DNA of 63,284 bases, the filler included, from Octopus bimaculoides (lineage: Eukaryota), in NCBI RefSeq assembly GCF_001194135.2. It is 9 parts of 9 records of this genome, joined end to end, with 100 filler letters (N's around TTAATTAATTAA, not from the genome) between each part and the next. Parts side by side here need not be neighbours in the genome. Positions count along the whole stretch, not along the records: positions 21,486 to 25,370 come from NC_068997.1; 8 more parts are not named here. The stretch is one strand, 5' to 3'. Position 1 is the first letter of the stretch. Each line of letters starts with the position of its first letter. The notes under the pieces are model-generated. The model ran no database searches. It was not told where the DNA came from and saw nothing but the letters and a program-made list of their open reading frames with translations. The position numbers were made by a program, and so were the translations under genes. Of the stretch, positions 21,486-25,370 are shown in pieces.

Positions 21486-22041
21486 CCAGCAGCAGCAGCC
21501 GCCGCCGCCGCCGCCTCCTCCGCACCATCCGTCGCACCCGCCGCCACCGCCGCTCACAACGTACGTGCCTCACCATCCTCACCAACAGCAGCAACAACGA
21601 CCACAACAGCATCATCATCATCATCAACAGCATCAGCAGCAGCAACACCACCATATGCAACAGCAGCAACATCATCATCAACAGCAACATCACCACCAGC
21701 AACATCAGCATCAACAACACCATCAACAACAACAACAACAACAACATCATCAACAACAACAATCTCATCCCCACCCTCATCACCATCATCAAACATCGTC
21801 ATCATCATCTCCTCAGCCTCCAAACGTGGGTTCGCCCCACGCTTACATGAACTCACACCTGTTGCATCATGTGACCGGATCCAATTCCCCTTACATTACT
21901 GGTTCGCTACTGGAGGACGCTAGCGGCGGTATACACTATCAGCTGACTCACACGTCCCAGTTAGGGGCGTGCGGTATACCCAGCGCTCACGAACTTCATC
22001 ATGATACCTATTCCTACATACCTAAACTAACGCATCTGTGA
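21486..22041 (+). CDS. Hox3: 3' part of the terminal coding exon of a probable Hox3-class homeobox gene (P/Q/H-rich linker and C-terminus); the 5' part including the homeobox is not visible
   Basis: Open frame from 21487 at the gap edge: QQQQPPPPPPPPHHPSHPPPPPLTTYVPHHPHQQQQQRPQQHHHH..., then unique GC-richer sequence TSSSSSPQPPNVGSPHAYMNSHLLHHVTGSNSPYITGSLLEDASGGIHYQLTHTSQLGACGIPSAHELHHDTYSYIPKLTHL, TGA at 22039-22041. Terminal PKLTHL* is the conserved C-terminus of Hox paralogy group 3 proteins (vertebrate HOXA3/B3/D3 end in EAPKLTHL). No homeodomain seen, so the identity rests on this motif. Confidence 0.62.
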
Positions 22042-22063
22042 AAGAGACGCGCGCGCGCACACA

Positions 22064-22094
<31 letters not shown>

Positions 22095-22179
22095 TCATAC
22101 ACAGACAAAACAGACAGTGTGTTTTTTCTTTGTGCTGTATTGTTTGTTTGTTTCTGTGAATTATTATCATTATTATTAC

Positions 22180-22212
<33 letters not shown>

Positions 22213-24499
22213 TAATTGTAAAATTGTACTTATACATACATACGTGTATATATATGTGTATGTATGCATATGTATCTATATATATATATATATGTATGTG
22301 TGAGTGTGCGCGTGTGTATATATAAGAGTGTGTATATNNNNNNNNNNNNNNNNNNNNNNNNNNNNNNNNNNNNNNNNNNNNNNNNNNNNNNNNNNNNNNN
22401 NNNNNNNNNNNNNNNNNNNNNNNNNNNNNNNNNNNNNNNNNNNNNNNNNNNNNNNNNNNNNNNNNNNNNNNNNNNNNNNNNNNNNNNNNNNNNNNNNNNN
22501 NNNNNNNNNNNNNNNNNNNNNNNNNNNNNNNNNNNNNNNNNNNNNNNNNNNNNNNNNNNNNNNNNNNNNNNNNNNNNNNNNNNNNNNNNNNNNNNNNNNN
22601 NNNNNNNNNNNNNNNNNNNNNNNNNNNNNNNNNNNNNNNNNNNNNNNNNNNNNNNNNNNNNNNNNNNNNNNNNNNNNNNNNNNNNNNNNNNNNNNNNNNN
22701 NNNNNNNNNNNNTTTTTTTTTTTTTTTTTTTTTTGAAAAACAAATTTTAATGAAAAGACGTTGAAAAATAATTATTTAATTAATGAAATAATAAAAAGAA
22801 AAGAATTAATTTCTAAAACATGCAAAGTAAAATATACTAGAACCTGTACAACATGGACGAAATGATAAATGTTAATAATGTTAATTATTATTAATAAGAA
22901 CAAAACAGTAGTGGTGAGGATGACGATTGTGAGGAGAAGGAGGAGGAAGAGAAGAAGGAAAAAGAGAAAGAGATGTAAAACTTCAAAGATGGCAATGACA
23001 AAAATGATAATAATAGTAATAATAATAATAATAATATTAACGAATAAAATGGTGATGATAATAGTAATAATAATAAAATATAAAAGTGAAAGAAAGGCTG
23101 ATGAGTATGATGATGATGATGATGATAATGATAATTGTAATTTTCATTGCAAATGCAACGGACAATGAGTTTACTGAGATATAAAGAAAAAAGGAAAGAA
23201 AATATACAGAAATAAATAAAGACAATTAATTATATACATTAAAACAAACAACAACCCACAAATAAAAACAGACAAAACTCAAAGAGTAAGAACGAGAGCA
23301 GATGGAGGTAGGTAGGGAAGAAAAGAGGTGAAGTCTGAGTTGAAGAATCTCTATGTAATAAATTTATGTTAAAAATAAAACAACAGCCACAATCTAAAGA
23401 AAAAATGCAACAGAATAATAAAAGATATATAAAAAACCAGACACCTGTTTCTCTGTCACTCATCATTAACGTTTATATTTATATGTATGTTTATAAGTAG
23501 AAATGTAAAGGAAACATATCAGCGAGTGTGCTTAGTAAGCAGACGTTTAAGACACGTTTCAAAAAGCATAAGCAAATACCATGGTTTTTTTTTACACTGT
23601 TACCTCTAATTAACACCGATTCAAAATTTATGTTTGCTAAAAGCACACGCTTATGAGTTTACCATACATTTCTACTTATTCTCCAACTGAGTAGTGCTTC
23701 TCTTATGTGCATGTGTGTGAGTGTGTATGTATATCATATTTTATCATTTAGTTATTTCAGTTATTATACTACTAGCTTAAAAGCTGCACTCCATGCAGAC
23801 TTTTAAAGTTGCTCCTGTGGAGGGCTAATTGGGCTTGCTGCCCTAGGAGCTAAATAGCATGACTATAGTACATTTATAATGATTATATGCCCCGGTGGTG
23901 TTTGATCAGAAGTTAAGGGCGGATGAGAATTAATTTTGTAATGCAATCATTCTATTGTTCCAGTCCCAAGATGAATTCCAACCGTTTCTCAATTTATACC
24001 AAAGTTCTTATCTCGACCTAAAATTAATGAAGCGAATCAGCCAAGTTTCACCTGCTAGTAATAGCAACTCAAATGCTTTTTAATCAGATCCCGGATGTTC
24101 AAGAACCAAATGAAGGGCAGAATTTTCAATGTAGAGTGAAATACAGGGGTCCAGGACAGAATTTAAAGTTTATTGTTATATATGGTCATGCTGGGATATC
24201 GCCTCGAAGAGTTTCGTCGAACAAATCTACTCCAGTATTCTCTTTTTAAGTTTGGTACTTATTCTGTTGTATTCTTCTGCCAAACCATTAAGTTAAGGGG
24301 CACATAAGCGAAACAACACCGGTTGTAAAGCAGTGGTGAGGAAAAACAGACACACATAAAGCATACNNNNNNNNNNNNNNNNNNNNNNNNNNNNNNNNNN
24401 NNNNNNNNNNNNNNNNNNNNNNNNNNNNNNNNNNNNNNNNNNNNNNNNNNNNNNNNNNNNNNNNNNNNNNNNNNNNNNNNNNNNNNNNNNNNNNNNNNN

Positions 24500-24564
<65 letters not shown>

Positions 24565-24815
24565 CTTGTACCCAGATATGCATCTATATATACATGTAGA
24601 TGTAGGTATGTACATACATGTACGTATATATGCATATAGTCACATATTATTTGTATTATTATATATATATATAAGTTTCGTAGCTACTTCAGCATAGCTG
24701 TTCGGTTCGAACGGACTTTATTTCAGTTTTTTTAACCCCGAGGGGACATCTTTAGCTGGTAACGATGCATACCTGCATCTAATACATTGCGAACAGGGGA
24801 GTGAANNNNNNNNNN

Positions 24816-24858
<43 letters not shown>

Positions 24859-25333
24859 CATTCACGCATATATAGATATACAAACACATATGTATATATA
24901 TACACACATACACACATATATATATATGTATATATATGTATGTATGTATGTATGAATGAATATGCGTGAAGGAGTAGAGAACAGACTGTGCGAGGGAGAA
25001 GGTTTTGAAGAAATGAATTAAAACGGGAAGCAAGGAAAGAAAGCTAAGAAAACAGAGATAAGAATCTAATCACACTTACACATACGTATGCACACACACA
25101 CACACACACAATTGTACTCACGTATCTAACACATCTGTATGTAAGCATATGTATATAATTACATATGTAAACATATATGTCTGTGTGTCTCTGATCAACA
25201 TGCAGCTTTCTCGGTGGGGTATTTCCTCCTCAGCTGTCGAGTGACGATCACAACTGATATGTAGTTGTGTGAGTGTATACGTACGGCTATACTTATCTAT
25301 AAATATGCATATGTGTATGTATATATATATATA

Positions 25334-25370
<37 letters not shown>

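What the first reader, a model, noticed from the sequence alone, without database searches (positions are those of the whole stretch)
21486..22041. Orphaned Hox3-type terminal exon whose homeobox falls in an assembly gap
Seen: a 184-codon open frame starting at a join edge and ending YSYIPKLTHL*. Known: PKLTHL* is the conserved C-terminus of Hox3 proteins, and homeobox-based searches miss a gene whose homeobox is unassembled. Inference: this is the 3' end of a cephalopod Hox3 that is likely unannotated or mis-annotated as a low-complexity protein in this assembly. My recollection that Hox3 was hard to find in early octopus assemblies is unverified.
Basis: partly seen in the sequence, partly recalled or inferred. 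Interest (0 to 1): 0.8.

Follow-up and report, generated by a model that had tools for sequence, protein, structure and literature searches.

The report
Probable Hox3 last exon, orphaned
This short scaffold carries a real, conserved protein-coding last exon that most likely belongs to the animal's Hox3 body-patterning gene, but the DNA-binding homeobox probably lies on a separate exon elsewhere rather than in the adjoining gap, and octopus Hox3 is already known.

Summary
Positions 21487-22041 (+) are open from the piece's left edge for 184 codons and end YSYIPKLTHL-TGA.

About 40% of the frame is a Gln/His run, and such repeats stay open by chance. The last 85 codons are real coding sequence. 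The only true relative among 1.84 billion representative proteins (P0001, contig L001) is 77% identical there. The final 35 codons differ by 21 synonymous and 3 non-synonymous changes.

The Hox3 assignment is probable but rests on one feature: the terminal hexapeptide PKLTHL. It matches the end of vertebrate HOX3 proteins (Pfam DUF4074). The tail itself gives no DUF4074 hit, and no homeobox could be linked to it.

The claim that the homeobox lies in frame in the adjoining gap is probably wrong. In L001 the same exon starts at a splice acceptor about 190 codons before the stop. It contains no homeobox, and the 1.9 kb upstream has none either. An insect Hox3 locus has the same layout.

O. vulgaris Hox3 has since been cloned, so this is mainly an assembly and annotation point. 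Interest is low to moderate.

The parts
21487..22038 (+). 3' part of a terminal coding exon (184 codons), open to the piece's left edge. It is the probable last exon of Hox3.
   Evidence: Translation; orthologous exon in L001/P0001; purifying selection.
21487..21570 (+). Pro/His-rich stretch (QQQQPPPPPPPPHHPSHPPPPPLTTYVP). The piece starts inside a (CAG)n(CCG)n repeat, a likely reason the assembly broke here.
   Evidence: Sequence. P0001 has a comparable Pro/His/Gln-rich stretch (HQQQPPPPHHPH...SSYVPQHHHQ), but alignment in this region is ambiguous.
21571..21792 (+). Gln/His run of 74 residues (37 Q, 30 H) encoded by imperfect CAA/CAG/CAT/CAC repeats. It is largely absent from the relative, so it is a lineage-specific expansion.
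   Evidence: TRF rows at 21570-21809; composition; gap opposite it in the alignments.
21793..21933 (+). Moderately conserved tail segment (SSSSPQPPNVGSPHAYMNSHLLHHVTGSNSPYITGSLLEDASGGI).
   Evidence: Aligned to P0001 with small indels.
21934..22038 (+). Most conserved block, HYQLTHTSQLGACGIPSAHELHHDTYSYIPKLTHL. The last 15 residues are identical in the relative, and the terminal PKLTHL is the PG3-type C-terminal hexapeptide.
   Evidence: 32 of 35 residues identical; 21 synonymous against 3 non-synonymous codon differences; the last 8 residues align to the HOXA3 end.
22039..22041 (+). TGA stop codon.
22042..22337 (+). Start of the 3' untranslated region. It is made of (CA)n, (ATT)n and TA/TG microsatellites and runs into a 375-N gap (22338-22712). 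No AATAAA occurs before the gap.
   Evidence: There is no similarity to the 3' flank of L001.

Best explanation
Positions 21487-22041 are the 3' part of the last coding exon of this animal's Hox3 (paralogy group 3) gene. The exon encodes only the region C-terminal to the homeodomain. That region has a Pro/His/Gln-rich low-complexity segment, here expanded by a roughly 74-residue Gln/His run, followed by a conserved 35-residue end that finishes with PKLTHL-COOH. The homeobox is not on this exon. It lies on an upstream exon separated by an intron longer than 1.9 kb in the relative, and beyond this short scaffold, which broke in a CAG/CCG repeat. How it would work is inferred, not shown. The low-complexity part would act as a disordered transcriptional-activation or interaction region. 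The invariant C-terminal peptide would act as a short linear motif for a partner protein, retained in PG3 proteins of both protostomes and deuterostomes.
For: Shown:
- The frame is open and ends YSYIPKLTHL*.
- One true homologue exists among 1.84e9 representatives: P0001, E = 1.6e-23, 77% identity over the tail, ending in the same 15 residues.
- There are 21 synonymous against 3 non-synonymous codon differences, and 23 of 27 base differences fall at third positions.
- In L001 the exon begins at an acceptor after an in-frame stop, and tblastn finds no homeobox in L001 or in the piece.
- PKLTHL is identical to the end of the human HOXA3 tail (recalled from memory). Pfam recognises that tail as DUF4074 at 96 bits, profile 1-63/63, ending two residues before the C-terminus. 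DUF4074 is described as the C-terminal domain of HOXB3 (PMC10042887).

Architectural precedent in protostomes:
- In Ranatra chinensis (L015) a canonical Hox3 homeobox exon ends at a donor after AKGLLAG. About 0.8 kb downstream, an in-phase exon of about 170 codons, rich in His, Gln and Pro, ends SSEQLTQL*.
- L002 and L003 also have an intron just after the homeobox.

By residue frequencies, my estimate of the chance that a given C-terminus reads PKLTHL is about 3e-8.
Against: - No homeobox, hexapeptide or Hox-cluster neighbour could be tied to this exon.
- The tail does not reach Pfam DUF4074 at E <= 10.
- hhalign aligns only the last 8 residues to HOXA3, with probability 5.8%.
- No full-length protein joining a homeodomain to this tail was found in either protein collection.
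- The organism behind the window and behind L001 could not be verified.
- The HOXA3 sequence was recalled from memory, although Pfam validated it.
- The exon structure is inferred from one relative, not from a transcript.
Confidence: 0.72

Rival explanations
1. One reading: Hox3 with the homeobox and the tail on one exon, as in vertebrate HOX3 genes. The homeobox would then lie in frame immediately upstream, in unassembled sequence.
For: The frame is open to the very edge of the piece. From general knowledge, vertebrate HOX3 genes encode the homeodomain and the whole C-terminal tail on one exon.
Against: In L001 the orthologous exon is bounded upstream by an in-frame stop and a good acceptor. 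It starts APVFGLYNNN..., without homeodomain residues, and 1.9 kb upstream holds no homeobox. Three invertebrate Hox3-type loci have an intron right after the homeobox.
Confidence: 0.1
2. The last exon of an unrelated, lineage-restricted low-complexity protein whose C-terminus happens to read PKLTHL.
For: Apart from 6-8 terminal residues there is no detectable similarity to any Hox3 tail or any Pfam family. The only homologue, P0001, is itself an exon-sized fragment without a homeodomain.
Against: An exact six-residue match placed exactly at the C-terminus is improbable by chance (about 3e-8 per terminus, my estimate). Those residues are invariant across a divergence that has nearly saturated synonymous sites. 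The His/Gln/Pro-rich tail exon ending in LTxL is also seen downstream of a canonical Hox3 homeobox in an insect.
Confidence: 0.12
3. A Hox3-derived duplicate, or an alternative transcript that uses this exon without the homeodomain.
For: Nothing here excludes it. No transcript evidence is available.
Against: Strong purifying selection with full conservation of the end fits the functional single-copy gene. Only one relative per source was found. There is no frameshift or premature stop.
Confidence: 0.05

Closest known systems
Vertebrate HOXA3/HOXB3/HOXD3 C-terminal region (Pfam PF13293, DUF4074)
   Same: The extreme C-terminus is PKLTHL-COOH. It lies at the end of a long tail, rich in Pro, Gly and His, downstream of the homeodomain.
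   Different: There is no domain-level similarity: no Pfam hit at E <= 10, and hhalign aligns only 8 residues. From general knowledge, vertebrates encode the tail on the homeobox exon. Here it appears to be a separate exon.
Cephalopod Hox3 genes already described (Octopus vulgaris, Euprymna scolopes, Sepia officinalis)
   Same: This is the expected gene. Hox3 is expressed in O. vulgaris embryos (PMC10509229), and homeobox plus 5' sequences are known for Sepia and Euprymna (PMC4186843).
   Different: The published Sepia fragment covers only the 5' region plus the homeodomain. No published C-terminal sequence could be obtained for comparison. The O. vulgaris probe primers do not match this piece.
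Hox3-type locus of the water stick insect Ranatra chinensis (L015, CM082409.1)
   Same: A homeobox exon ends a few codons after the homeodomain. After an intron comes a terminal exon of about 170 codons, rich in His, Gln and Pro, ending in xLTxL-COOH (SSEQLTQL*).
   Different: The intron is only about 0.8 kb. The end is QLTQL, not KLTHL. No other sequence similarity to the window's tail was seen.
P0001 / L001 (Logan contig from run SRR25158130, organism not identified)
   Same: It is the orthologous exon: 77% identity over the last 85 residues, an identical last 15 residues, and the same stop position.
   Different: It lacks the 74-residue Gln/His run and has an Asn-rich N-terminal part instead. 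Its 5' exon boundary is visible, whereas the window's is cut off.

Membership tests
Hox paralogy group 3 (Hox3) | ANTP-class homeodomain with PG3-diagnostic residues in the same protein | tested here: inconclusive
   tblastn with a PG3 homeodomain finds nothing in the piece or in L001, including the 1.9 kb upstream of the orthologous exon. The upstream exons are not available in any source I could reach.
Hox paralogy group 3 (Hox3) | [quoted passage not shown] | not testable with these tools
   It would lie on upstream exons, outside the piece.
Hox paralogy group 3 (Hox3) | Extreme C-terminus PKLTHL-COOH | tested here: met
   The window ends ...YIPKLTHL*. This is identical over six residues to the end of the recalled human HOXA3 tail, which Pfam scores as DUF4074 at 96 bits. 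The comparison sequence came from memory and was validated only by that Pfam score.
Hox paralogy group 3 (Hox3) | Genomic position in the Hox cluster between Hox2 (or Hox1) and Hox4 (or Hox5), on the same strand as the Hox3 homeobox | not testable with these tools
   The piece is 3.9 kb with three internal gaps. No animal genome collection was searchable.
Hox paralogy group 3 (Hox3) | A transcript joining the homeobox exon to this exon | not testable with these tools
   No protein with both a homeodomain and this tail was found in the 1.84e9-representative search or in the word-indexed searches.
Pfam PF13293 (DUF4074, HOX3 C-terminal domain) | Score at or above the gathering threshold (22.3 bits) against the profile | tested here: not met
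   No hit at E <= 10 for the 184-residue, 85-residue or 44-residue versions, nor for P0001. The positive control, the HOXA3 tail, scored 96 bits.

The most novel reading that the evidence does not exclude
PKLTHL-COOH would be an ancient bilaterian short linear motif of PG3 Hox proteins. It has survived unchanged in a protostome and in vertebrates while the rest of the tail has diverged beyond recognition. In this lineage, and in at least one insect, it sits on a dedicated homeobox-free terminal exon. That layout would make homeobox-only surveys systematically truncate Hox3 gene models.
Probability: 0.5. Interest if true: 0.35.

Novelty: new member of a known kind. Interest (0 to 1): 0.27.

Why it matters
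If the piece comes from an early octopus assembly, it shows that the reported absence of Hox3 there (PMC5831810) was an assembly artefact and not a gene loss. That agrees with the later cloning of O. vulgaris Hox3 (PMC10509229).

It also gives annotators a practical handle. The conserved 35-residue end can be used to find and complete Hox3 gene models whose last exon lies far from the homeobox.

The unchanged terminal hexapeptide between a protostome and vertebrates points to a small, testable functional motif in PG3 proteins.

None of this changes the current picture of cephalopod Hox genes.

Tried and rejected
- **Word-indexed protein searches with the tail.** The tail alone and the tail alignment A2 found no homologue. 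These searches did not even return P0001, so the index appears incomplete for such proteins.
- **Third protein search, with a PG3 homeodomain consensus.** It returned only fragments of 111 aa or fewer. None was recognisably cephalopod and none carried a tail.
- **Other family and structure searches.** Pfam and PDB sequence search found nothing for the tail.
- **Exact look-ups.** Eight possible products of the window ORF are not in the 15-billion-protein collection.
- **JGI metagenome scan with A2.** 138 pattern matches, none confirmed.
- **Annelid-type Hox3 homeobox contigs from host-associated metagenomes (L005-L014).** They have no KLTHL-type exon within reach.
- **L002 tail against P0001.** No similarity, so L002 could not be used as a bridge.
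- **Literature.** No held paper prints KLTHL in a Hox context. Motif-oriented Hox papers said nothing on a PG3 C-terminal motif. The run accession SRR25158130 appears in no paper. The Albertin 2015 paper is not held, and the 2022 paper does not mention Hox.
- **O. vulgaris Hox3 probe primers.** They do not match the piece.
- **RNA searches.** All Rfam hits are microsatellite artefacts far below their gathering scores, and ARAGORN finds no tRNA.
- **Structure prediction.** Not attempted, because the region is low-complexity and has only one homologue.

Full report
**1. What is there**

The piece spans 21486-25370. It is a short, gap-ridden stretch with N runs at 22338-22712, 24367-24499 and 24806-24815, and it is full of microsatellites.

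Translating 21486-22041 gives a frame with stops. Translating 21487-22041 gives 184 sense codons and a TGA, ending HELHHDTYSYIPKLTHL*, with no stop back to the piece's edge.

The first bases are (CAG)4(CCG)n. The scaffold therefore ends inside a trinucleotide repeat, which is a plausible reason why a short-read assembly stopped there.

**2. Is it more than chance?**

The length of the open frame is not informative by itself.
- Residues 29-102 (21571-21792) are 37 Gln and 30 His out of 74, encoded by CAN repeats.
- Other frames and the opposite strand are open there too.

The last 85 codons are different. An exhaustive HMMER search of them against 1.84 billion representative proteins found one true relative:
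- P0001 is 187 aa, with E = 1.6e-23 and 77% identity, and it ends in the identical 15 residues LHHDTYSYIPKLTHL.
- The three other listed hits are repetitive, unrelated proteins.
- P0001 is encoded on a 2,970-bp Logan contig, L001, from run SRR25158130.

Over the ungapped last 35 codons the two DNAs are only 74% identical, yet 32 of 35 residues are the same.
- There are 11 identical codons, 21 synonymous differences and 3 non-synonymous differences.
- Differences by codon position are 4, 0 and 23.

This is a translated sequence under strong purifying selection, compared across a divergence that has nearly saturated silent sites.

**3. Exon structure**

In L001 the reading frame is closed upstream by a stop. 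That stop is followed by a typical acceptor, ttgctattcaccag|GCG, at about L001 1904. The exon then reads APVFGLYNNNN... for about 190 codons to the stop.
- The 1.9 kb upstream is AT-rich and has no long frames.
- tblastn with a PG3 homeodomain finds nothing in L001 or in the window piece.

So in the only orthologue available, this is a self-contained terminal exon without a homeobox.

The window's Pro/His-rich start has a compositionally similar counterpart in the middle of P0001, although the alignment there is ambiguous. If the two correspond, the octopus-type exon should continue for perhaps 60-80 codons beyond the piece's edge and then meet an intron. This is an inference.

**4. Is it Hox3?**

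The positive evidence is the terminal hexapeptide.
- I wrote out the human HOXA3 C-terminal region from memory and checked it against Pfam.
- It scores 96 bits on PF13293 (DUF4074), with the profile matched from position 1 to 63 of 63 and ending two residues before the C-terminus.
- A paper describes DUF4074 as the C-terminal domain of HOXB3 (PMC10042887).
- The last six residues of that sequence, PKLTHL, are identical to the window's.
- From ordinary residue frequencies, I estimate the chance of this hexapeptide at a given C-terminus at about 3e-8.
- These residues are invariant between the window and L001.

The negative evidence:
- The tail does not hit DUF4074 even at E <= 10.
- Profile comparison aligns only the last eight residues.
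- No protein joining a homeodomain to this tail was found.

Gene-architecture precedent helps the Hox3 reading.
- In the insect Ranatra chinensis (L015), an annotated, canonical Hox3-type homeobox exon ends at a donor after AKGLLAG.
- About 0.8 kb downstream, an in-phase acceptor opens an exon of about 170 codons, rich in His, Gln and Pro, that ends SSEQLTQL*.
- Two further invertebrate Hox3-type contigs, L002 and L003, also have an intron just after the homeobox.

A homeobox-free, His/Gln-rich last exon ending in xLTxL is thus what a protostome Hox3 can look like. I put the Hox3 assignment at about 0.7-0.75.

**5. Context in the literature**

- A 2016 review states that eight of the eleven Hox genes were identified in the O. 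bimaculoides genome, "with the exception of Hox2, Hox3 and PG-4" (PMC5831810).
- Hox3 has since been identified and its expression described in O. vulgaris (PMC10509229).
- Hox3 is reported in squid genomes (PMC6962438; PMC7708342).
- The Sepia Hox3 clone covers only the 5' region plus the homeodomain (PMC4186843). I found no published cephalopod Hox3 C-terminus to compare with.
- The O. vulgaris probe primers do not match the piece, which is uninformative.

**6. What could not be established**

- The organism of the window and of L001.
- Whether the source assembly annotates this exon. Eight possible products are absent from the protein collection.
- The transcript structure.
- The genomic neighbourhood.

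**7. How it probably works (inferred)**

The exon supplies the part of a Hox3 transcription factor that lies C-terminal to the homeodomain.
- One part is a disordered Pro/His/Gln-rich region, with a lineage-specific Gln/His expansion that is largely absent from the relative.
- The other part is a strongly constrained 35-residue end, whose final PKLTHL is likely a short linear interaction motif.

No function of this motif is known to me.

**8. Verdict**

This is a genuine, conserved terminal exon and probably belongs to Hox3. Cephalopod Hox3 is already known, so the finding matters mainly for annotation, plus a small point about an ancient C-terminal motif.

Noticed in passing
L015 10001-11630 (Ranatra chinensis CM082409.1): A canonical Hox3-type homeobox exon has its donor after AKGLLAG. 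About 0.8 kb downstream, an in-phase terminal exon rich in His, Gln and Pro ends SSEQLTQL*. The record annotates only the 101-aa homeobox fragment as a partial hypothetical protein.
   Followed up: partly
L002 1705-4493 (Logan SRR26425195, organism unknown): A compact four-exon Hox3-like gene: an N-terminal exon, a hexapeptide exon (QIFPWM), a homeobox exon and a long tail exon. There is an intron about 8 codons after the homeodomain. The contig ends inside a (CAG)n run, another assembly break in a poly-Gln repeat.
   Followed up: partly
window 21571-21792: A Gln/His run of about 74 residues that is largely absent from the relative, i.e. a lineage-specific trinucleotide-repeat expansion inside a developmental transcription factor. 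Its length may be polymorphic.
   Followed up: partly
window 24140-24366: A non-repetitive stretch ending ...ccggttgtaaagcagtggtgaggaaaaacagacacacataaagcatac at a gap, followed by (TG)n. It looks like the tail of a SINE-type repeat. ARAGORN and Rfam find no tRNA-like part.
   Followed up: no
window 22035-22320, 24509-24970, 25093-25370: There are 48 sub-threshold Rfam hits (mir-297, mir-3149, mir-466 and others). All sit on TA/TG microsatellites, at 19-49 bits against gathering scores of 49-101. They are artefacts.
   Followed up: yes
window 23780-23900: A GC-richer, non-repetitive island (aaagctgcactccatgcagac...gggcttgctgccctaggagctaaatagc) in otherwise AT-rich, low-complexity sequence downstream of the gene. 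It has no ORF and no Rfam hit, and its nature is unknown.
   Followed up: no
L005-L014 (JGI and ENA host-associated metagenomes): A family of Hox3-type homeobox exons ending ...WFQNRRMK(Y/H)KKG at an apparent donor site. They recur in many metagenome samples and are presumably host (invertebrate) DNA.
   Followed up: partly
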